A DNA stretch of 63,856 bases, the filler included, from Hausera hauseri (Eukaryota): assembly GCA_046269625.1 (NCBI GenBank). It is 10 parts of 10 records of this genome, joined end to end, with 100 filler letters (N's around TTAATTAATTAA, not from the genome) between each part and the next. Parts side by side here need not be neighbours in the genome. Positions count along the whole stretch, not along the records: positions 29,777 to 39,323 come from JBJURY010344379.1; 9 more parts are not named here. The stretch is one strand, 5' to 3'. Positions 180-39,323 of this stretch are shown piece by piece; position 1 is the stretch's first letter, and every line of letters begins with the position of its first letter. Below the pieces are notes generated by a model. It did no database searches. It was not told the origin of the DNA and worked only from the letters and a program-made list of their open reading frames with translations. Position numbers and translations under genes: made by a program.

Positions 180-3100
180 TTTGTGCTAGCTGAATTCATT
201 TTGCGCGCATTTTCGACCCAACTTTCTCTTTCATCCTTGAAGCAGCCGATTTTGTTTCTGATTAGGTTGCTATACAATGGATGATTCTATGGGTAGTTGG
301 ACGTGTTCAGTAATCCATCTGTTACCACTTGCTGCCGCAGTTGTTCGCGATTAACGTTTTTCAGTTTCAGTAAAACTATTTGTGTCACTGGCAATTATAT
401 TAATCTTACAACCGACAAACATTTGTCGGTAATGAGCTAAGTCACGACAGTGCAGCTCATACATCCGTATCTTACTCAGATCCAATACTATCTGTCCTAT
501 ATCACGTAAACTATCCTGTATGACTTCTTCTTTATTTAAAAGTACGACAACCAATCCATCAGCAATGTTCATTGACCGCATAAATTGAGCCTTACTGGTG
601 TAATCAATGTCTTTTCATTGTTACATAGGCGCACATTGAGCCGTTTTGACATTCTCCACTGTTTTTTCATAGAGAGAATTGTTTTTTAGCTTAGAGTAAT
701 CTTTTCCAAAATTTCGTACAAGCCGAGGCTCGTTTTTCCGAATTCTTATTTATGTAAGCTTTGAATATCGGAGCCTGGATAAATCGGATTGTGCGACTTA
801 ATTGTCTGACGTATACGCCAAGCTTGATGTAAAATTGCCATAGATGCCAATGAACAACGTAATTTTGCTTGGATTTATGTGTCATAAGGAGCTTCTTCAT
901 ATTTGAGTCAGGTCGGCATTGGTTAAATGGCGTGGTCGGTAACTCGTCCAGAAAGTCATGCAGTTCATCTAGTGTCACAAGAACAACTTTCATTAAGTAT
1001 CCGATTGAGCTGCTTTCTGCTGTGTGTGCTCTCGGTAGATTTCCTATTATTGCATCCAAGTCTTGTTTGTCGACTATCCATTCAAAGAAACCGTATGGCA
1101 AGGGTTGCGAACACGTCCACTCATACATGTTATTAATATCAATATACAGCAACGATGTGGTATTATCAATGGTAGCGCCAACCTGATGCTTGTTAACAAA
1201 CGTCACACTACCACGAATACTTACGTGAAACAGTCGGTACATTTCTGAATCTTGCAACAGTTCTATATCATGATCAAGTGTCATCAGGGCTGATGTTCAA
1301 CTCATTATTGGTATGGAATAAAGTTGAGTGGCTCCAACCTATCTTTCTGTAACGCTTTAGTGCAAAATGCTTGAAAAACACTGCCTAACAAGTACACATC
1401 AAGTTTTAAATTTTGAAATATATACTCCAATAGATTTGTACAGCCGAGCTCTGCCCAAAATTCCTGTGCTTTCTGATATGCATCTTCTGTGATACTAGAC
1501 CATCGCGATGGTAATTCTTCTGTCATATGAAGCCTGTTATACAGAAATATACATTTGCTACGTGGAACGTGCACAGGGATCTGTGTTGATGTTAACGGCA
1601 TATCATGCAAAGCATTTACTAGCTTTGCTAAAGATTCATTCAGAAATTGTAATGAATCAAGAAAGCTAACCTGGAAATGGTTTATACGAACAGAAAAAGA
1701 TAGGTATTTCTCCATCTTAGTAGGATTTATAGATAATTCCAAGTGTGGAAATCCATTTCTTGCCAATTTTAAAATATGGTGACAGTCATAACCTCTAAAA
1801 TTATGAAAGACCGCCGGTAGAAATGGTCGCACACGCTTTGTTAAATTACATGACCTATGTGCAGTTCTTAAGTATCGACCGGTAAAATGGTCTTGATCCG
1901 GTACAAGCTGTTGCTTTTCATCAAGCGGTAATATTTTGTGAAACATTTAACATTCATCGGTGGATGCAAAACGTAATGGTTCGTATTCATCTATCCAAAT
2001 CAGGGGTTTAGTGAAATTATTGTGATACCACTGTGCGATTTCTGCTCTTACTATTGTTTCTAAATGCTTTTCAAAGTCATGTATACAATTCTAGCCATGA
2101 AAAAAGTAATACTGGTGTTGATCAATGGCTTTTATTGGGACTACCAGCATACCGACGGCGATTGAAACATGCTTTTTGTCATATGCGTTGTGCCGTGTAG
2201 AATAGCTTAAATATCAGCATATACCACATACGCAGGACTGTCTGTTTTAGACAAGTTATGAAATCTAAGATCCTTGTTGACAGGCATTACATACCTGAAA
2301 GCATGCAAATATACAGGGCGCCATTTACATCGTATACGATTTTGGATGAACTGGTCATGGTCCATGTTCACCAGTTTGTTTAAATTTGTCACGGCCATGT
2401 AATGAAAAAAAATTTTTTTGCTATAACAGCAACAAATTTGCTAAGCGTCCGTTTCGATTCTCATTTCTATAAATTATGTCCACATGGGGGTTCTTGTAAG
2501 TCTCTTCAACCGCCAGTATTTTTAATATTGTGTCTTACCGGTAAACGTTAATTGACAGTGTCAGATTACGCTGTTCAAACACCGAAAAGGTTTTCAGTTT
2601 CATCGACATCCAACATTCATCAAAATGCCATTAGGAAAAATCCTGTCGATATTGATTTGGACTATATGCATGTTTTCTGGGAACTTGATAATATTTCAAT
2701 ACAGTCAGAATACTAAAGAGAACAGTATTCGTTATCGTCATTGTTTTGTACATTCACTACCGCCAGAGACTGTTTTAGAACTGCAGGTGTCGGCATGAAT
2801 TATTGCTCAGACAAATAAATTATGTCACTCGACTTTGTTGCAACAAATTCTAAAGTGACAATTTTTATAATTCGCCAGCCACTACCCTTTTCGGCTTAGT
2901 TGGCGATTTTTCATCAAACCTTTTGCCTACATCGGCAATATAGTTCATCTCGACGTGACAGATACCATTGTTTCCTGTCGCCTTCTACATTTTCGAATTC
3001 TGCAAGTGCATAATATTGCATTTTGCACTGTTGGAATTTCTTCACTTCAGATTCAAACCGGTTGCGTACATGGGAGGGCACATGTTTTAATTGTATTGTT

Positions 3101-29776: not shown

Positions 29777-32700
29777 CCTTATGGAAAATTCTACTTTACA
29801 ATACTCGTGTGACGTTGATGTCGGAATGGTAGATACACGATCTACTTACACTATATTTTTAAATAACGTTTTATTTTCCTTCAGTTTCCATTCATCTTGT
29901 TCTTCGGAGGCTATTTCCCGTTGACAACATTGCTGTTAATATAGTAATTTGTCAAATCCGGGAGAAAGTTATTGGATAATTCACAGTTGATTTTGCTTAT
30001 TTTCCCGTGATTAGTAGTATTGAAAAGTCTTGATGTATCAACCTGTGCCAATATCGATAACGATTTTTCATCTGTATTGGTTGAAAGATGATTTTTATTC
30101 TTGCGGTCAGGATGATGATATCGATTGAAGCGAATGTAGACCGATATACTGCCAAACAAACAAAACCCGGCAAGAAAAAATCGAGGCGACAAACACCACG
30201 GTCAAGCGGTGTCATGCGCCGAAGTAAAACCAATACTTGTGGTGACGCCCGAAACTGCGGCACCACATTACTCCCGTTGCAAAATGATATTATGTAAAGC
30301 AAAAATGAAAGTAGAAAACTGCAAAGAGAACAGTTAATGTGATCTAATCAGTTTTGGTATGAACAAGACGTTGAACATTATCTATATTTTGTTCTCTGAT
30401 AAATTTACTAAAGGTAACTGTCTTGCTTTGTTTAACGTGCTGTTTGATTGTCTGTTGCTGTGGTCGGGGTGAAGATATATTTTGATTTGACCTCAGCAGG
30501 TTGAGAACTGGTTGGTATGGCGTTTAGTGTTGATAGGAGTCTTAGAGTAGCAGGTTGTCGTGTAGGTAGATTGGAAGAAGAACTGAAGGAATCAAGAAAA
30601 ATTTGTGTAGACTCAACAGAAGATTCTAGTATGTCATTAACAAAGAATGCGGGTTTTACGTTGGTTATGTATACGTTTTGTTCTTTATCGTTTTTGAGTA
30701 TCGTAACTGTGTGTGAGGTAATATTGAGAACTTTAAATTGTCCTTAATAGTTTGGTTGGAATCCGGAAGGTGAAGGGTTTTTTAACCACACGAACTTTGC
30801 ATTAAATAGTAAATCAGGTAAGTATGTTTTGTCACCATGTATTATTTTGCAGAAAGAGTCCTGGATTAACTGTAGAAAATGATTTTGTGCGGACCTAATG
30901 GTTTCGTCAGTTGGTATGTTGTCCAAGTCGGTGAGTTCAAAGAGTGCACTAATTGTGGTACCAAAAAAGGCTTCAGCAGGTTCGCAATTAATAGTAATAT
31001 TATGTGTGTTGCGCCACCCAAGTAATACAAAAGGAAGGATGGTGACCCAGTTCGTATGCGTTTCGGCTAGAATCTTTAGCGAGATTTTAAAAGTGCGGTG
31101 AAAACTCTCCAATAAGCCGTTCGACTGGGGATGATATGGAGTTGTGTGTATGTGACTTATTCCCAGTCGATTAACTGAAGACTTGAATAGATTCAATTCA
31201 AATTGAGGACCTTGGTTTGTAATTATATTACGGGGTAAACCGAACCGGCTAATCCAAATTCTTATGAATGCATCGGCTATAGAATCTATACTGATGGAGC
31301 GCAATGGAACGGCTTAAGGCCAACGGAATGCGCGGTCCATCATTGTTAAGAGGAATTGGTAGCCGTTATCGGAAGGTAATGGACCGACGATATCTAAATG
31401 TACCGATTCGAAACGGGACGTGCAGGGAAAATGAAATGAAGGTGGCTTGAGATGCTTAGCTACTTTGAATTTTTGACAAGCCGCACACTGTCTAACCCAG
31501 TCTTGTACGTCAGACCTCATCGATGGCCATGTTACGTGACGTTTGAAAAGGCGGAATGTAGCCTTCGAATCTGGGTGATGTAACGAATGGATATGGTTAA
31601 ATGCAATTTGTTGTATAGAAGGTGCCAAGATTGGCAAATGTTGTCCAGGTGTCGACGTGTCCATGGCTACTCCATCAATGATTTGTACAGATTTGCATTG
31701 TTTAAGAATATACACGGAACGGGAGTTTTGGATTAATTGTTGTCTGAGACAGAAATATGACCAATTTTAAAGTTAAATGTTGACAGATATGAGATATGGC
31801 GTTCTTGAAGAAGAGATGGTTGTTTCATTTTCATTACGTGAACGAGAGGTTTGTGGTCCGTTTAAATGGTGAAGGAACGAGCAATAAGCAAATGTGAAAA
31901 ATGTTTCAGAGCTAAAACTATAGCAAGGAGTTCTCTATCGAAGGTGGAATAACGGCGTTCTTTTGGCTGGAGCTTACGTGAAATGAATTCTAACGGCTCA
32001 TTTATTCCTTGTGATATTTGATAAAGAACCGCTCCTACTGCTATAGTTGATGCGTCGGTTGTTAGAATGATGTCAGCGTCGGGTTTTGGATAAGCTAAAA
32101 TCTGGACTGTTTTAAGCTTTTCGCGGAGTTCATCGAACTGGTTAACAAGTTCTGGCGTCCAATATATAAGTTTTTTCTTTGGCCCTGCTCCTAACTGCAC
32201 GAAAGGAGCAGTTAACTGGCTACAGTGTGAGACGTATTTATAAACGAAATGTAAAGTCCCGAGGAAACTACGAATGTCAGTAGTGGTTTTCAGTAGCTCG
32301 ATGTTTCGTAATTGATGAATTCTATCAGGCTGTGAGCTGTGAGCGTCAGGTGTGATGACGTGGCCAAGGAAATTGACCTTTTTCTGGAAGACGTAACACT
32401 TAGAAAAGGTCACTTGCAGATTATAGTTGTGTAAACGTTGGGAAACTAGTCTGAGATGTTCTTCGTGTTGTTTTGGTGAAACCGACGCGACTAATATGTC
32501 GTCGATGTACGGGTGTGCAAATGGCAAACCTGAAAGAACTGAATAAATGTGCTGTTGGAAAGTTTGTGCTGCGTTCTTTAAACCGAACTGCATGAATGCA
32601 TATTCAAAAAGACAAAAATGTGTTATTATGGCCGTTTTTTGGATGTCTTCAGGAGCTACCGGTATTTGGTGGTAAGCTTTTTCAAGATTTATAGTCGAAT

Positions 32701-34712
32701 AAATTGTGGTCTTGTGTAAAGAATGCAATATATCCTTAATCAAAGGTAGAGGATAAGCATCCATGGTAGTAACGTTATTAAGTTGGCGGTAATTGCAGCA
32801 TGGACGAAATTTGCCATCTTTTTAGGGACGACATGGAGTGGTAATGCCCAAGGTGATTTCGAGCGTTTTATTATGCCAGCTTGCTCGAGTGCAGATAATT
32901 CCGCTTGGATTGTCTGTTGACGGCGTGGTGAAAGTGTGAGGAGTTTTTGCCTAACGGGCCTAGGATTTTCTGTAATGATATAATGAAACGTCGTGTTAGC
33001 CGGTCGAAATGATGAGTCTTTTTATTGCATGAAAACAATACTTGGTTAAATACTGTTGCATTTCTTGGCTAAGCGTAGTAAAGGCTGATATTGTCACGGC
33101 AGTGGCTTGATTGGACTTAGTATAAGAAATGGTAGAATTCGAGACGCCTAAATTTGACTTCAACAGAAACTTAGGATTATTTATTTTGGTATTAATACGG
33201 TTTTTATTCACATTGATTGATGGTTTCTTTAATATTAATTTTATAATAGAGATAGGCTGCATTATCGGTTGGTTATTTGTAGAGATCGGCTTTGTTGATC
33301 TGCTTTTAATGATCCGACGTTGTCTACAATCTACAAGGAGGTTGTAGAAAGATAAAAAATCAGACCCAAGTATTGAAGATTGTGTGTCAGCAACGATGAA
33401 AGTCCAATCAAAAATGTCGGGGAATGGTGGTAATGTGAATGAAACCGTAGCCGTGCCGAATACACGTAAAGCTTAGCCGTTAGCTGTGTACAACTTGATG
33501 TTAGATGTTGAGATGGCTGTTGTTTGGATAGATGGTGGTAACAGAGAGACAGCGGTTCCTAAATTAATGAGGAAGTTAATTGATTGATTGGATTTGGAAG
33601 TTAAAGAGGCTTTTAATGTAAAAACGGAATAAGTACGGCTATCATGATGAAGATGTTTGTCTGTGCCAGCATGTGCCGAAACGCCTGGCGGCTTTACAAG
33701 TTTTTCGGAGGCACAGGATTTATGTTGTTGGAAGGGGTAGGATGTGATGGATTAGATCGGTTAACGAATGTGCAACCTGTAACGCAATTCTGTGCTTTAG
33801 AATTGAATTGGCGCATAAAATCTGCAACCTAAGCAGCATTTAGTGCAGTTGTTTTTGAATTAGGTGTGGTAGAAATACACCATTGATCGTGTAGGTGACC
33901 CCGAATGCCTTGAATTTTGAGATGAAGTGCGGCTATGGTCCGCATCAAAACGATTTCGTCTAGGCATGGTCAAAGCTTCGATTTTTGAAGTGAGTGCAAA
34001 AATTGCTTGGTGTATGTTGGCGTTTTCTGAACGTAAAAAATTTATCTTGGAGTTCAGATTAGATATGTCGTTAGCTTGTTGAGATTTTGGTTTGTAGCGC
34101 AGCGGCTAGTAATGGGGCTGTATGCGCATGTAATATCTCGTGGCTTTTGTTAGTCAGTTGTGCTAGTTTTTGTAGTGACGGTGTCCTCTACTATGGTCAA
34201 CGGTGCACATATGTCTCTAGGTAAAGACTGCAGAAAATATCTACGTAATAAATTGGCATTGTTCGCTTTATTAACGCTAAGAGTACTCAAGTGAGTTAAT
34301 GGGGTTTGAAAAATTTTGAGGGTTTTAATGTGCCTATGGTTTTTTGTCCTTAAAATATTTGTGGATAATGTTGTCCAAAGATAGTTCCGTGATTTTTAAA
34401 ATCGAGTTAGTGTTTTGTATGGGTCACTGCTTTTGAAAATTTCCGACAAGTTGGGAACCTGAGACTTAATTTTGGAAGGCAAAAGTATATGCAAGCTGTT
34501 TGTTTTAAAAAATAGTCGAAAATATTATTTGACTTCAACCAAGCCGCATGAAAGTCCAACCACGTCCGGCTGAAATGTTGACTGTCAAAGAAGTATTCTA
34601 CGAAAGGTAGGTTTACAGTAGACGACGGAGGTAGAGGTTAATTTAGCGGTATGCTTACAGTAGGAATGTCAGCAAAGTCTTGTTGGTCGTTGGATGAGGC
34701 TTTCGGATCGGA

Positions 34713-34940
34713 CCTACCTAACAGACGGTAATGTGCAGTCAGTATAGGTGTTGAAGATGAGTTGGTGTAACTTGTTATAATGTCGGATTGTCGGAGAAAA
34801 AGTCCATTAAAACTAAGGCAAAAATTAGCAAGAGTTGTTTGTCGTTGTAACATGCCTGACAATTTTGCAATTGTTGCTGATTTGTGAATGTAGTAGATTT
34901 TTGTATGCTTATTTTCGAATAACAAGACAAGTGGAACGAA
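34713..34940 (-). other. Ubiquitin-like domain at the N-terminus of Gag (copy B)
   Basis: LVLLFENKHTKIYYIHKSATIAKLSGMLQRQTTLANFCLSFNGLFLRQSDIITSY...LTAHYRLLGR aligns along ubiquitin; the terminal GG reads GR (GGT AGG, one substitution away). Confidence 0.75.
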
Positions 34941-36069
34941 AATGTCACATAAATCGGGTGTGCAATGTCGTACATAAGACACGGGCGCGCCAAAAATCCC
35001 TGAGTTGTAATGGCTGGCCTGAGCATTTTGTGCTTCATTATTTATAACAGAAGTATGAATAATGAGATAAGATGACTCACCGGAGTAATCCAATTCCGAA
35101 GGTTTGCTGTATTTCCTGTGCAGTAGACTACTGTACCCTAATTCGCCTGTTGTTGTAGTTTTTTGATCCGGTTCACGCATACGTTCCCAACGTGTTTTGC
35201 ACATAGCGCTTTGAATCATATTTGAACATAAATCTTGACGATCTGCCGATTTCGCTATATAACAATCGTGTTTAAAAAACGTGACTGATTTAGGGAACAT
35301 TATTGGCAGGACTAATTATTCTCGTAAAATATTTAGTTGCCGAATCCACAATGAACCGCTTCGATGCGTTTTGAGCAAAATCAATGAGATCATTCGATAT
35401 TTCGTTAAGGTCTATTTTGGTCAAATTTATGTTAGAATACTGTAGATTATATACATGAACTGCAGCCAAAACGGCATCCAGTGTGTCGAGATGATAATTC
35501 ACACAGACAGCAGTGCCGTTATTTGAGAGTATTTTAATTCAGTGACCATAAGTAATGGTCATATTTCCTCTTTTAAATCTCTCGCCGAACTCACCGAAAC
35601 TGGCGGCATTTTCGCATATGGAAGTCAAAAAATGAACCGAAAATATTAAACACAGTCGATTATCAAAACTCACTTCTTTGGTTAAAGTCGATTTTTAGTT
35701 CATGTATTTTCCAATTAACACATTTGCGTTTTCAACTGTCTTTCAACAATACACCATAACTCTGCTGGAAAATGTCGGAGTTTACCGGAAAAAGTGGTGT
35801 CGTATGATATGAAAAGTTTTTAAGAGTTTGAAGAATTTTTAACGGTTTCTATGGATACCTTTGTGAGGATTTTCGACGTAAATAAGCGTATCAAAATTAA
35901 GATAGAAATCATATTTAAAAACATTTGGCGGGAAATACTTTAGAAAACATCTAAGTTTATGGTAGAAAATGCTTTGGCCAGTAATCCAAGCTGCAACATA
36001 AAAGTTGAACGCTTCAGATAAAGAGCATTTTTCTTTACCGAATCACATTGGTAGTCAAGGTACAACGTG

Positions 36070-36235
36070 CAATGCTTTTTTGCTCTCTCTTTCCAAACTA
36101 ATTTAAATTTAGAAGGTATTTGGTTCCATTTTTTGGTTTTTGCAAATTCAATAACTTCCTCTTTGGAACAAACCTGAGTGGCACGAAAATTAAGAGTTTG
36201 AGTATAGAAGTGATAATAGGCAACTTTAATAGCCG
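36070..36235 (-). pseudogene. HMG-box-like fragment in the leader of copy B
   Basis: AYYHFY...SKEEVIEFAKTKKWNQIPSKFKLVWKERAKK fits the HMG pattern AY..F......W..L....K..W...A. Confidence 0.55.
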
Positions 36236-37077
36236 AAAGATTTGGTGTTGAAACCGAAGAAACCGACTGAGTTGATTTAGTACCAACATATCTGGACGTT
36301 ATTAGACTGGAAACGTTGGTTTTCAAATCCAATATTTCCGATTGGGAAACTTCAACCCAGTTGCAACCATAATTCATTTTGACTCGAGTTGTCACTATTT
36401 CGTAATGAGTGGAATCCAACATTTGATTAAGTCGATCAGCAACATCTTCCTGTTCGTTAAAGAGCAATTCCGGAATTGCAGGATTGACAATCGGGATGGG
36501 ACTATCTGTCTTGTCCAACAATTTACTTTGAGGTTTAAATAAATTAAGATCACATGGAACAGAATTCACAGTGATGGAGAATCGTCGATTTGTTTTCATT
36601 GCGCTTATCCGATGCTATGTAATTGAAGGCTAATTCACCATTTTCAAACATGAAACACATTCGATCCATGTCAGCAAACACCATAATGCTCAATAATGAT
36701 TCTGAAAGTTCTCTATTTGAAAGAATTTTCATACCCAATTCAGCCATTGATTTTAAAACACAATCTGGACTGAAAAAATTAGTTGATAACGAATATAAAA
36801 ACTGTTCATTTCCGAAAGTGATGAATAAACAATTAAAGGATTCATTAGATACGGTTTTAAAGATTGAAAGTGTAACTCCGGAGGGTTGTGTTTTGTCGAC
36901 ATTTGTCGTGCTATACGATTCGGAACAATTTGACTCAAGGAGGTCGATGTTTATCGGACTAATTGATCTAATACAATTTTTCCCTGAATCCGAATTTAAC
37001 AATTGCGTTACTTATCGTTAAAAGGTTACGATAAAACGGACGAATTAAACTCAAGTGATAGCGAAATAACGATTCAA

Positions 37078-38050
37078 TCATGCCAGTTTCGAATTTGCTT
37101 CGTTGATTTTCGATTTGATTAAAGTCAAAACTTGAGTTCGTTTTTTTGGGAAACTATTAAAAATCGACAGTAGTACGATGAAATCAAAACTTTGACAACG
37201 AAAATCGTTGAAATTTGTCGAAATTAATTTCAGCCAAATATTTTGCAATTTTGGTTTAAATTGAAATGTTCTTAATGAATGGATCAATGCCGCTGCGGAA
37301 TTTTGTTTAACCGTAAAATTAATTGGTGAAAACATACTTTGTAAATTATCAAGTTCGGTATTTAAACGAATTCAATTAATGAGTTCAATCATGTTGGAAC
37401 CTTCGCCACGGTTCATGAGAAACGACACTATCGATGGTAGAATTGAGTAGTTCCATTAGAAGTTTTTCCACTTTCTGAAAGAAATTCTGTCTCAAATCCA
37501 GTTTGCTAATGGCTTCTAATGCCGGTGAAATTAATTTATTTCTACTGGAAATCCAATCGAATAACTTATTTGCAAGTAATGCGCTACATTGTCCTTTGCA
37601 GATATCCGGTAAAAGCGATATTAAATAACGCTGCATAGTATCGTTGGAAATATATTTGACATCTAATAATTTTTCAACAATATCATCCATTCGGCGTACG
37701 TAAACATTCCATTTGGAATGATCCTAACAAAGCTTCGCTAAATTAACACTATCTTCTTCATCTATTTTGGACAATTCGACAATTTTTTGAATTAGAATCT
37801 CAATGAAAAATTCTGCAATTTCATTTACATTATTTGAATAACAGATTTTGGTGTTTGGAGTAAACAGGCCTCAAAATTCGATGAAACTGGCTTTAAAATA
37901 ATACTGAAGTAATAATCATTTTCCACAAAACTAATTAGATTTTCTCGAAGTAGCTCAAATTCTGAAACATCATTTTTAGCTAAATCTATGAGAGTTCTAA
38001 GAACTGATTGGATTGAAACTTTTTGAATATATCTTTCCTATGTTACATTT
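37078..38050 (-). pseudogene. FANCD2: Captured N-terminal fragment of Fanconi anemia protein D2
   Basis: MQRYLISLLPDI...LISPALEAISKLDLRQNFFQKVEKLLMELLNS vs FANCD2 LQHDIITSLPEI...[38 protein letters not shown]...FDFIVLLSIF...LIKSKI vs WIKAIE...FDLVMLFIIY...LRNKI; frameshifted, no evident introns. Confidence 0.8.
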
Positions 38051-38098
38051 ACATAGGAAATTGTTAATACTCTGACGAGATTTTGCTGAAGTAGATAC

Positions 38099-38116
38099 AT
38101 CCCACTTCTGACACCA
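38099..38116 (-). promoter_or_regulatory. Primer binding site complementary to the tRNA-Leu 3' end
   Basis: Minus strand ...TGAACA-at-TGGTGTCAGAAGTGGGAT: canonical 18-nt Leu PBS 2 nt after an LTR-type CA end at 38119. Confidence 0.9.
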
Positions 38117-38819
38117 ATTGTTCAATCCTCAATAACCAGAATTTTGGAGAGACTTTTAATTTAAGACTTTCCGATTAATGGGGAGAACAATTTTACGTTA
38201 TTATGATAATGGGAATATTTCGTGGAGATATCAAGTCACCTTACTTACTTATATACTCGGTAATGTGTTTCAAGGAGACGTGTGCTTGACTGTTATTTAC
38301 TTTCTAAGGTTTAGACTCCTATACTTTACTTATAATTATACTGGCCCTCGTCAGGTCGTTTTTACCTGGTCGAGGAATTAACCACAATTACTTATTTGTT
38401 ACTTATATTACTTTCTTTATTTAGATAACCAATGGACAAAAAGTATGTAAATCAATAAATATAATTAAATGCAACAAAATGTAACGACAATAAAATCAAA
38501 ATCAATTAACACGTAATGACGTAATATAGATACCCGTTAAAATATACACAATGAAATAGGAATGACTTACGTGAAGACATAGTATAAGGTGTGACGATCA
38601 GAATCACCAAGTAATTTGTTATGACTCTACTTCTAAATGTTACTACTTATATAGTAATTCATGTTCTCTACATGTAAATAAAAAATTGTTTATACATGCT
38701 CAAAAACCCATGTCTATGATCATAAAATCAACATACATTTGTCAACACCATTAATAAAATCACGATTGTGAGCAGAAAATTAATTTGCACATTATTTTCA
38801 TAAAGAAAAATGTCAATGA

Positions 38820-38932
38820 GACATTGTTTACACATATTGCACATTGTTTGCGGACATAATTGAACATTTGCAGACATAATTGAACATTGTTTGCACATTT
38901 TTGCAGACATAATTGAACATTGTTTGCACATT
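38820..38932. repeat. Short tandem repeat
   Basis: Three to four degenerate copies of GACATAATTGAACATTGTTTGCACATT. Confidence 0.8.
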
Positions 38933-38984
38933 CGAGGGGGGTTCGAAGAAAATTGTCCACAATTTATTACTGATCGAGGGGTAA

Positions 38985-39323
38985 TGGTATATGGATATAT
39001 TTGCCTGTTGCCTTCGATTTATACCGAATAGAGTCGGGTTCGTATATGTCATCGTCCAGTAAGATCGTTTCGTCCAGTTGTATCTTACGCTTTCGTCCAC
39101 ACTGTGATGTTGTGGGTGCTATTCGCACCGTATCGGAAGCCGAACTTTGTGTGATTATCTCATCTGACCATTTTACTTGTTTATGAATTGATTGGTAGCA
39201 TTGAGCTAGAGCAGTGCTCCGTAATGCAAAACCTTTCGAATCGTAGAATTTTCGCGCTAATTCTTTGAACGTGTTCGTTGTTAATTGATATCGGCGGATT
39301 ACTTCTTCGTGATAAAGGATATC
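38985..39323 (-). pseudogene. Orphan protein family ORF-X, copy 2 (3' part; not in ORF track)
   Basis: DILYHEEVIRRYQLTTNTFKELARKFYDSKGFALRSTALAQCYQSIHKQVKWSDE / GRKRKIQLDETILLDDDIYEPDSIRYKSKATGK is homologous to 6057-6527. Confidence 0.75.

What the first reader, a model, noticed from the sequence alone, without database searches (positions are those of the whole stretch)
34713..38119. 'Pack'-type Gypsy family: leader between PBS and gag is a mosaic of captured host gene fragments
Seen: a perfect tRNA-Leu PBS (38099-38116) right behind an LTR-type CA end, then ~3 kb carrying a FANCD2 N-terminal fragment, an HMG-box-like piece and other unidentified coding-like pieces, then UBL-Gag, all co-oriented. 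Two other copies of the same family have entirely different cargo at the equivalent position (copy C: ankyrin, RPB2, RCAN, alpha-tubulin; copy A: ELOF1 plus an unknown ORF). Established: LTR elements can acquire mRNA pieces by RT template switching; Pack-MULEs and Helitrons carry multi-gene mosaics. Inference: this family, while keeping full gag-pol, serially collects host transcripts at a fixed internal site. That would form a copy-specific archive of host mRNA that could yield chimeric proteins or small RNAs against host genes. I know of no described animal Gypsy family doing this at this density, but cannot check the literature.
Basis: partly seen in the sequence, partly recalled or inferred. 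Interest (0 to 1): 0.92.

Follow-up and report, generated by a model that had tools for sequence, protein, structure and literature searches.

The report
Gypsy retroelement carrying host gene fragments
A dead Gypsy-type retroelement carries, between its primer-binding site and its gag region, a 2.8 kb patchwork of pieces copied from at least two, probably three, host genes; this is a real example of a capture process already described in animals, not a new kind of element.

Summary
On the minus strand an LTR-type repeat ends ...TTGAACA at 38119. Two bases later comes a perfect 18-nt primer-binding site (PBS) for tRNA-Leu(CAA), at 38116-38099. About 120 nt of shared leader follow, then about 2.8 kb of single-copy sequence (about 37975-35170), then a decayed gag / protease / RT / RNase H / integrase region (about 35000-30435).

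The insert is coding-like and sense-oriented. It also holds a beta-propeller-like piece whose best match, ELP1, is below threshold, plus unidentified pieces. It has no poly(A) tail, no nested LTR pair and no border repeats. No test supported the 'UBL' label.

Best reading (0.6): one reverse-transcription product made by template switching between the element's RNA and co-packaged host mRNAs. This is LTR-mediated retroposition, already described in animals, including multi-gene chimeras (Tan et al. 2016).

Main rival (0.25): an unrelated LTR+PBS lies next to an older mosaic and a truncated Gypsy.

The family-wide claim of serial collection at a fixed site could not be tested. The other copies are outside the piece and no further genome sequence could be fetched. 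There are no RNA data.

The parts
38119..39323 (-). LTR-type high-copy repeat, visible 3' part. Ends ...TTGAACA at 38119. Holds a 33-nt tandem repeat at 38867-38932, a TATA-like motif near 38652 and AATAAA near 38418. Its start is probably beyond the piece's edge.
   Evidence: sequence; tandem repeat; summed depth 440-3060 as far as 39323, against 10-14 for single-copy sequence, and contigs of X2 and X3 break at 38117.
38099..38116 (-). Primer-binding site, an 18/18 complement of the 3' end of tRNA-Leu(CAA) plus CCA.
   Evidence: tRNA-Leu-CAA sequence printed in PMC10359600.
37976..38098 (-). Leader shared with other copies. Holds a perfect 10-bp hairpin at 38060-38034.
   Evidence: the exact single-copy contig ends at 38005, about 30 nt into shared sequence, and mean depth of the bin 37954-38151 is 752. 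(hairpin).
37081..37723 (-). FANCD2-derived fragment (aa about 181-272 and about 334-411). No intron-sized gap. Broken by one stop and one frame change. The stretch 37975-37724 may continue it upstream, judged by eye only.
   Evidence: The upstream extension was tested and not supported.
36340..36960 (-). Beta-propeller-like coding fragment. Best match is the first ELP1 propeller, below threshold. Present at about 5 copies in run X1. It lies within the 153-codon frame 37011-36553 and the start of the 224-codon frame 36614-35943.
   Evidence: Pfam E 1e-3; Atlas: N-terminal beta-propellers; depth about 61-65. At the frameshift near 36569 other copies differ in length.
35943..36143 (-). SIN3 fragment, matching aa about 544-600 of SIN3B in the HDAC-interaction domain. 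It is fused in frame behind the preceding piece.
   Evidence: P0121, E 1.4e-11, 54% identity; P0121 matches SIN3B 512-599 at E 5e-14, and also SIN3A and yeast Sin3.
35170..35942 (-). Unidentified single-copy stretch. One frame is open from 35694 to 35293 apart from a single stop.
   Evidence: no family found; exact contig 35107-36333, depth 13.9.
34641..35315 (-). 225-codon open frame running from single-copy sequence into the family-shared region.
   Evidence: Not supported as UBL; high-copy depth starts near 34985.
33334..34640 (-). Decayed gag-like and protease-like region. The assignment rests on position and on motifs seen by eye.
   Evidence: no Pfam domain; depth 460-2550, contigs 85-91% alike.
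30435..32821 (-). pol: RT, RNase H, integrase zinc-binding domain and integrase core. In-frame stops at 31864-31862, 31316-31314 and 30746-30744; one frame change near 31750. A further in-frame stop at 33475-33473 and frame changes near 33000 and 32800 lie just upstream, between the protease-like region and RT.
   Evidence: RVT_1 4.8e-23, RT_RNaseH_2 6.8e-31, Integrase_H2C2 3.6e-14, rve_3; frames.
29777..30398 (-). Candidate polypurine tract (30398-30378, 76% purine) and candidate start of the 3' LTR: TGTTCAA at 30377, the exact inverted form of the 5' LTR end. It runs to the piece's edge.
   Evidence: 0.07 such heptamers expected in the tail; GC skew ends near 30300. No alignable match to 38119-38990.

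Best explanation
This is one decayed Ty3/Gypsy-type proviral insertion on the minus strand. Its 5' leader was interrupted or replaced by a 2.8 kb mosaic of host mRNA copies.

Inferred mechanism: during minus-strand DNA synthesis in the virus-like particle, the reverse transcriptase had copied pol and gag. It then left the element's RNA just upstream of gag and copied parts of several co-packaged host mRNAs in turn. The order was unidentified RNA(s), then SIN3, then a beta-propeller protein mRNA, then FANCD2. It then returned to the element's leader about 120 nt from the primer-binding site and finished normally. Because all templates are sense RNAs, every captured piece ends up in the element's orientation, without introns or poly(A), and the pieces abut one another directly.

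Shown: the anatomy, the identity of two pieces, their orientation and their copy number.
Inferred: that all parts belong to one insertion, the switching itself, and a long LTR of about 1.8 kb or more whose other copy starts at 30377.
For: - An LTR end plus a perfect tRNA-Leu(CAA) PBS sits at 38119/38116-38099.
- RT, RNase H and integrase lie on the same strand.
- FANCD2 and SIN3 pieces, and a beta-propeller-like piece, are all in sense orientation. SIN3 is fused in frame to the piece before it.
- The coding-like signal is on the minus strand only and exceeds all 2000 shuffles.
- There is no A or T run longer than 7, no border repeat, and no LTR pair inside the interval.
- Independent contigs of run X1 reproduce 35107-36333 and 36737-38005 without a single difference, at single-copy depth. 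High-copy sequence resumes on both sides, at the leader and just upstream of gag. This is what one interrupted element would show.
- TGTTCAA at 30377 lies 55 nt behind the pol stop and directly after a 76%-purine run. It is the exact inverted form of the 5' LTR end TTGAACA.
- The process and its multi-gene products are documented in animals (PMC5131818).
Against: - No second LTR is alignable inside the piece. This fits only if the LTR is about 1.8 kb or longer.
- LTR pieces in other runs are 94.6-100% like this copy, but gag pieces are only 85-91% alike. That hints at different ages or lineages.
- Related LTR copies in X2 and X3 are followed by a different, tRNA-His-like primer site.
- No contig joins the leader directly to the gag side, and none spans the two borders between single-copy and repeated sequence.
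- Base composition and GC skew change near 35000.
- No parental FANCD2 at 85% identity or more appears in X1.
Confidence: 0.6

Rival explanations
1. Composite locus. The LTR, PBS and about 120 nt of leader are the truncated 5' end of a separate, younger LTR element. By chance it lies next to an older retro-mosaic of host cDNA pieces and a 5'-truncated old Gypsy copy in the same orientation.
For: - LTR pieces are 94.6-100% like copies in runs X3 and X4, while gag pieces are 85-91% alike. At many gag positions nearly all depth in X1 carries a different letter from this copy.
- No LTR match lies downstream of pol within the piece.
- A related LTR is paired with another primer site in X2 and X3.
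- Composition shifts near 35000.
Against: - It needs three coincidences: the same orientation, a break just behind the PBS and leader, and a break just upstream of gag.
- A multi-gene sense mosaic itself calls for an LTR-element origin, and that origin predicts exactly these flanks (PMC5131818).
- The terminal heptamer at 30377 matches the end of this LTR.
- The lesion density of pol, about 2 per kb, needs only a few percent divergence, so the age gap may be small.
Confidence: 0.25
2. Assembly chimera. Unrelated repeats and single-copy sequence were joined wrongly at the repeat borders near 38005-38117 and 34985-35137.
For: No listed contig spans either border. Both borders lie in high-copy sequence, where assemblers err.
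Against: The interior is reproduced exactly by independent contigs up to about 30 nt into the repeats on both sides. The order and orientation make biological sense.
Confidence: 0.05
3. DNA-level origin. The pieces are either ordinary LINE-made processed pseudogenes that landed in an existing element, or remnants of host genes in place.
For: Processed pseudogenes are common. The fragments carry stops and frame changes.
Against: - There is no poly(A), no border repeats, and the pieces come from internal or 5' parts of the genes.
- Pieces of unlinked genes abut directly, and one junction is in frame.
- All pieces have the same orientation.
- FANCD2 aa 181-272 is contiguous.
Confidence: 0.05

Closest known systems
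LTR-mediated retroposition chimeras in animals (Tan et al. 2016, Genome Res, PMC5131818)
   Same: Partial host mRNA copies are flanked on both sides by parts of an LTR element in the same orientation. Two or more parental genes can be joined. The mechanism is template switching in the particle.
   Different: There, part of the element's internal reading frames was replaced in every case. Here the whole set of gag-pol domains is kept and the cargo sits in the 5' leader. Junction microsimilarity and the second LTR could not be checked here.
Bs1 of maize, and gene fragments inside intact maize LTR retrotransposons (PMC2774510; review PMC13317346)
   Same: Bs1 carries pieces of three unlinked host genes fused into a hybrid reading frame inside an LTR element.
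   Different: These are plant elements. As I recall it (not checked in the papers read here), Bs1 is a small element that cannot move by itself and lacks pol; this one is an animal Gypsy with pol. The maize survey found no element holding pieces of more than one gene.
Transducing retroviruses (oncogene capture)
   Same: Host mRNA sequence is taken into a retroviral genome by recombination during reverse transcription.
   Different: They usually capture one gene, which is selected for function and often replaces viral genes. Here there are several short, decayed fragments with no sign of function.
Pack-MULEs, Pack-CACTA and Helitrons
   Same: The outcome is the same: mobile elements that carry mosaics of host gene fragments.
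   Different: Those capture at the DNA level, keep introns, and have terminal inverted repeats or Helitron ends. This locus meets none of their defining features.

Membership tests
Ty3/Gypsy (Metaviridae) LTR retrotransposon | pol domain order protease, RT, RNase H, integrase | tested here: met
   RVT_1, RT_RNaseH_2, Integrase_H2C2 and rve lie in this order on the minus strand. The protease is seen by eye only.
Ty3/Gypsy (Metaviridae) LTR retrotransposon | Primer-binding site complementary to a tRNA 3' end, just inside the 5' LTR | tested here: met
   18/18 match to tRNA-Leu(CAA) plus CCA, 2 nt after the ...CA end.
Ty3/Gypsy (Metaviridae) LTR retrotransposon | Two matching LTRs in direct orientation with TG...CA ends | tested here: inconclusive
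   No match inside the piece. A candidate 3' LTR start, TGTTCAA at 30377, mirrors the 5' LTR end TTGAACA. This would need an LTR of about 1.8 kb or more.
Ty3/Gypsy (Metaviridae) LTR retrotransposon | Polypurine tract before the 3' LTR | tested here: inconclusive
   The 21 nt before 30377 are 76% purine, above the 95th percentile of the tail, but not a pure tract.
Ty3/Gypsy (Metaviridae) LTR retrotransposon | Target-site duplication | not testable with these tools
Ty3/Gypsy (Metaviridae) LTR retrotransposon | Recognisable gag (capsid or zinc knuckle) | tested here: not met
   No Pfam gag domain in 34640-33700. Only a knuckle-like motif seen by eye in broken frames.
LTR-mediated chimeric retrocopy | Host-gene-derived sequence without introns | tested here: inconclusive
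   FANCD2 aa 181-272 aligns without gaps in one frame. The SIN3 piece is contiguous. The host genes' own structure was not available.
LTR-mediated chimeric retrocopy | Flanked on both sides by non-adjoining parts of one LTR element, in the same orientation | tested here: inconclusive
   Orientation and positions fit. That both flanks come from one element is not shown.
LTR-mediated chimeric retrocopy | Microsimilarity at the switch points | not testable with these tools
   This needs the parent genes and a cargo-free copy. Neither could be fetched.
LTR-mediated chimeric retrocopy | No poly(A) tail and no LINE-type border repeats | tested here: met
   The longest A or T run is 7, and no repeat of 6 nt or more is shared by the two borders.
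Ubiquitin-like domain ('UBL-Gag') | Match to a ubiquitin-family profile or fold | tested here: not met
   No match in Pfam, in solved-structure sequences or in the Atlas. The model has pLDDT 40. The absence of a match is weak evidence for a decayed sequence.
HMG box | Match to the HMG_box profile | tested here: not met
   No match. The stretch is homologous to the SIN3 HID.
Pack-MULE / Helitron type capture | Terminal inverted repeats or Helitron ends, and fragments captured as DNA with introns | tested here: not met
   The element has an LTR, a PBS and a reverse transcriptase. No long inverted repeats flank the cargo.

The most novel reading that the evidence does not exclude
A small Gypsy lineage primed by tRNA-Leu has a capture-prone site about 120 nt behind its primer-binding site. 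Different copies hold different host mRNA pieces there while keeping gag-pol, and cargo-bearing copies were propagated further.

Hints, all:
- This copy shares its distinctive letters at the listed gag positions with only about 1-7 copies' worth of depth in X1.
- Similarity to those copies ends at the cargo border, near 35137-35166.
- The beta-propeller piece is present at about five copies.
- One contig seems to link that piece directly to the gag side, but only 34 nt lie on its shorter side.

That could not be checked here.
Probability: 0.15. Interest if true: 0.7.

Novelty: new member of a known kind. Interest (0 to 1): 0.35.

Why it matters
This is a clear example of reverse transcriptase stitching pieces of unlinked host genes (FANCD2, SIN3 and a beta-propeller protein) into one sense-oriented block inside an animal Gypsy element. 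At least one junction is in frame. This is exon shuffling by LTR-mediated retroposition. It would add a case in which all gag-pol domains are kept, if the single-element reading holds. This copy is dead and its cargo is single-copy, so it has no evident function. The locus would become important only if many sister copies turn out to carry different cargo at the same site.

Tried and rejected
So neither the genome beyond the piece nor other copies could be fetched.
- The best protein relatives of the RT are only 45-48% identical. No close family member is in the protein collection.
- The 225-codon 'UBL' frame and the 153-codon frame found no relatives.
- Exact scans for the LTR end in metagenome and viral contigs gave 0 hits. 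Protein-based locus searches also found nothing.
- No tRNA gene and no Rfam family lie in the piece.
- The FANCD2 extensions I saw by eye at 38037-37828 and 37153-36971 got no support from tools. The matches listed there are chance-level.
- ELP1 got no support from solved-structure sequences.
- The 82-codon frame 35538-35293 remains unidentified.
- LTR start at one of the three TGTTCAA sites inside the tandem repeat (38919, 38886, 38866): set aside, because high-copy depth continues to the piece's edge.
- The bacterial promoter and terminator scan was useful only for the hairpin.
- Only one read-laying run was allowed and it covered 33400-39323, so depth over pol and the tail is unknown. All four runs are held as contigs, so no read-level junction support or RNA evidence exists.
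Full report
**Anatomy.** Everything of interest lies on the minus strand of the piece (29777-39323). Reading 5' to 3':
- A high-copy repeat runs from the piece's edge to 38119 and ends ...TTGAACA.
- 'AT' follows, then TGGTGTCAGAAGTGGGAT at 38116-38099.
- About 120 nt of leader follow, with a perfect 10-bp hairpin at 38060-38034.
- About 2.8 kb of single-copy sequence follow.
- A 225-codon open frame (35315-34641) leads into a decayed gag-like and protease-like region.
- Then come RT and RNase H (32821-31865; RVT_1 E 4.8e-23, RT_RNaseH_2 E 6.8e-31) and integrase (31766-30435; Integrase_H2C2 E 3.6e-14, rve_3).

The domain order and the Pfam families are those of Ty3/Gypsy. From the protease-like region to the end of pol there are four in-frame stops (33475-33473, 31864-31862, 31316-31314, 30746-30744) and three frame changes (near 33000, 32800 and 31750). 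The element has its full set of domains but is dead.

**The primer-binding site and the LTR end are real.** The complement of the 18-mer equals the last 18 nt of tRNA-Leu-CAA plus CCA as printed in PMC10359600; tRNA-Leu-CAG differs at one base. Contigs of runs X2 and X3 that match the repeat break at exactly 38117, which confirms a repeat end there. The repeat carries a perfect 33-nt tandem duplication, and TATA-like and AATAAA motifs in the order expected of a U3-R-U5 layout (seen by eye).

**The cargo.**
- *FANCD2.* The frame 37723-37388 matches Pfam FancD2 above its cut-off (28.5 against 27 bits, E 3.6e-7, profile 182-273). It matches human FANCD2 181-272 without a gap (E 7e-5). The next frame, 37371-37081, has chicken FANCD2 334-411 as its best hit (E 0.55). 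That match is weak on its own but collinear.
- *SIN3.* The 224-codon frame 36614-35943 had a single significant hit among 1.84 billion representatives. That hit is P0121 (95 aa, E 1.4e-11, 54% identity), matching query residues 158-216. P0121 in turn matches SIN3B 512-599 (E 5e-14), SIN3A and the yeast Sin3 proteins. The window piece's only match among solved structures is SIN3B 544-593. No HMG-box match appeared.
- *Beta-propeller piece.* The 153-codon frame 37011-36553 has a sub-threshold match to the first ELP1 propeller (E 1e-3, profile 12-109). Its language-model features are those of the N-terminal beta-propellers of large scaffold proteins. Its identity stays open.
- *One former frame.* The 153-codon and 224-codon frames meet at a frameshift near 36569, where other copies in X1 differ in length (table 4). 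They were probably one frame of about 357 codons. If so, the propeller piece and the SIN3 piece were fused in frame.
- *Unidentified rest.* The stretch 35942-35170 is unidentified.
- *Coding signal.* Open runs of 80 codons or more sum to 668 codons on the minus strand and 132 on the plus strand. The total exceeds every one of 2000 shuffles.
- *No LINE marks.* There is no A or T run above 7 nt, no border repeat and no LTR pair inside the interval.

**Copy number and independent support.** The runs are held as contigs only, and organisms are coded.
- In X1, summed depth is 460-2550 over 33400-34983 and 440-3060 over 38152-39323. It is 10-30 over most of 35182-37953.
- Two contigs match 35107-36333 and 36737-38005 without a single difference, at depths 13.9 and 10.7.
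- By the logic of k-mer contigs, shared sequence resumes at about 35137 and about 37976.
- Only 36340-36960, the propeller piece, is at about 61-65, roughly five copies.
- So the mosaic is real sequence, is single-copy as a whole, and sits between two family-shared flanks. No contig spans the borders between single-copy and repeated sequence, so the joins themselves are not independently confirmed.

**One element or a composite?**

For one element:
- The flanks are exactly the two parts of an LTR element that should border an internal capture.
- Everything is co-oriented.
- A multi-gene sense mosaic without poly(A) is itself the mark of LTR-element reverse transcription (PMC5131818).
- TGTTCAA at 30377, the exact inverted form of the LTR end TTGAACA, lies 55 nt behind the pol stop. 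It directly follows a 21-mer that is 76% purine, and only 0.07 such heptamers are expected in the tail. GC skew also ends near there.

Against one element:
- Nothing in 29777-30460 aligns with 38119-38990. The two fit only if the LTR is about 1.8 kb or longer, so that the visible parts do not overlap. Continued high depth to 39323 agrees with a long LTR but does not prove it.
- LTR pieces in X3 and X4 are 94.6-100% like this copy, while gag pieces are 85-91% alike.
- At many gag positions nearly all X1 depth carries another letter.
- A related LTR in X2 and X3 is followed by a tRNA-His-like site, not the Leu site.

The lesion density in pol, about 2 per kb, needs only a few percent divergence. 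This copy seems to belong to a minor lineage of about 1-7 copies, so the age argument is weak. I put the single-element reading at 0.6 and the composite at 0.25.

**Mechanism.** The switching is inferred, following the model of Tan et al. Reverse transcriptase copied the element's RNA from its 3' end through pol and gag. It then switched to co-packaged host mRNAs several times and returned to the leader near 37976. It finished through the primer site. This accounts for the shared orientation, the direct abutment of pieces from unlinked genes, the in-frame junction, the partial internal and 5' gene pieces, and the absence of poly(A). Microsimilarity at the junctions, the key mark of this process, could not be tested without the parent genes.

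**Comparison and novelty.** LTR-mediated retroposition is documented in fly, mosquito, zebrafish, chicken and mammals, including chimeras of two or more genes (PMC5131818). Other documented cases:
- Bs1 in maize carries three genes.
- 425 intact maize LTR elements carry gene fragments (PMC2774510; PMC13317346).
- Bdelloid rotifer LTR elements have acquired extra reading frames (PMC5408684).

The locus is therefore a new member of a known kind. It is unusual mainly in keeping all gag-pol domains, with the cargo in the leader. That claim rests on copies outside the piece and could not be tested. A few hints keep it alive at about 0.15.

**Limits.**
- No RNA run holds the stretch.
- No family consensus was built, as the rules require.

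Noticed in passing
window 38970-39323 (-): A 118-codon open frame runs off the piece's edge and stops at 38969-38967. It lies in sequence that is as high-copy as the LTR and is 98.4% alike in a run of another organism (X3). It has no Pfam family and no relatives in metagenome contigs. It is either the interior of a long LTR or the end of another element's gene.
   Followed up: partly
window 38117 (runs X2, X3): A related LTR (94.6% alike) ends at the same base. It is followed by C + TGGTGCCGTGA..., which is complementary to the 3' end of tRNA-His, rather than by the tRNA-Leu site. Close LTR relatives therefore seem to use different primer tRNAs.
   Followed up: no
window 38119-39323 in runs X3, X4: LTR pieces are 98-100% identical in runs labelled as three other organisms from different studies, while the single-copy cargo is absent there. 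This points to recent activity in close relatives or to transfer between them.
   Followed up: no
window 38034-38060: A perfect 10-bp hairpin with a 7-nt loop lies about 40 nt behind the primer-binding site. It may be a packaging or dimerisation signal of the leader.
   Followed up: no
window 36340-36960: Only this part of the cargo is present at about five copies in X1, with 3-4 sequence variants. One contig seems to join 36886 to 35137 with 29 other letters between them, but only 34 nt lie on its shorter side.
   Followed up: partly
window 38867-38932: Two perfect copies of a 33-nt unit lie in the upstream part of the LTR. Each contains the heptamer TGTTCAA, which also forms the candidate LTR terminus.
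   Followed up: partly
window 30245-30270 (-): TGGTGCCG..., which resembles the start of the His-type primer site seen in X2 and X3, lies about 110 nt inside the candidate 3' LTR. It is an 8-nt match only and is probably chance.
   Followed up: no
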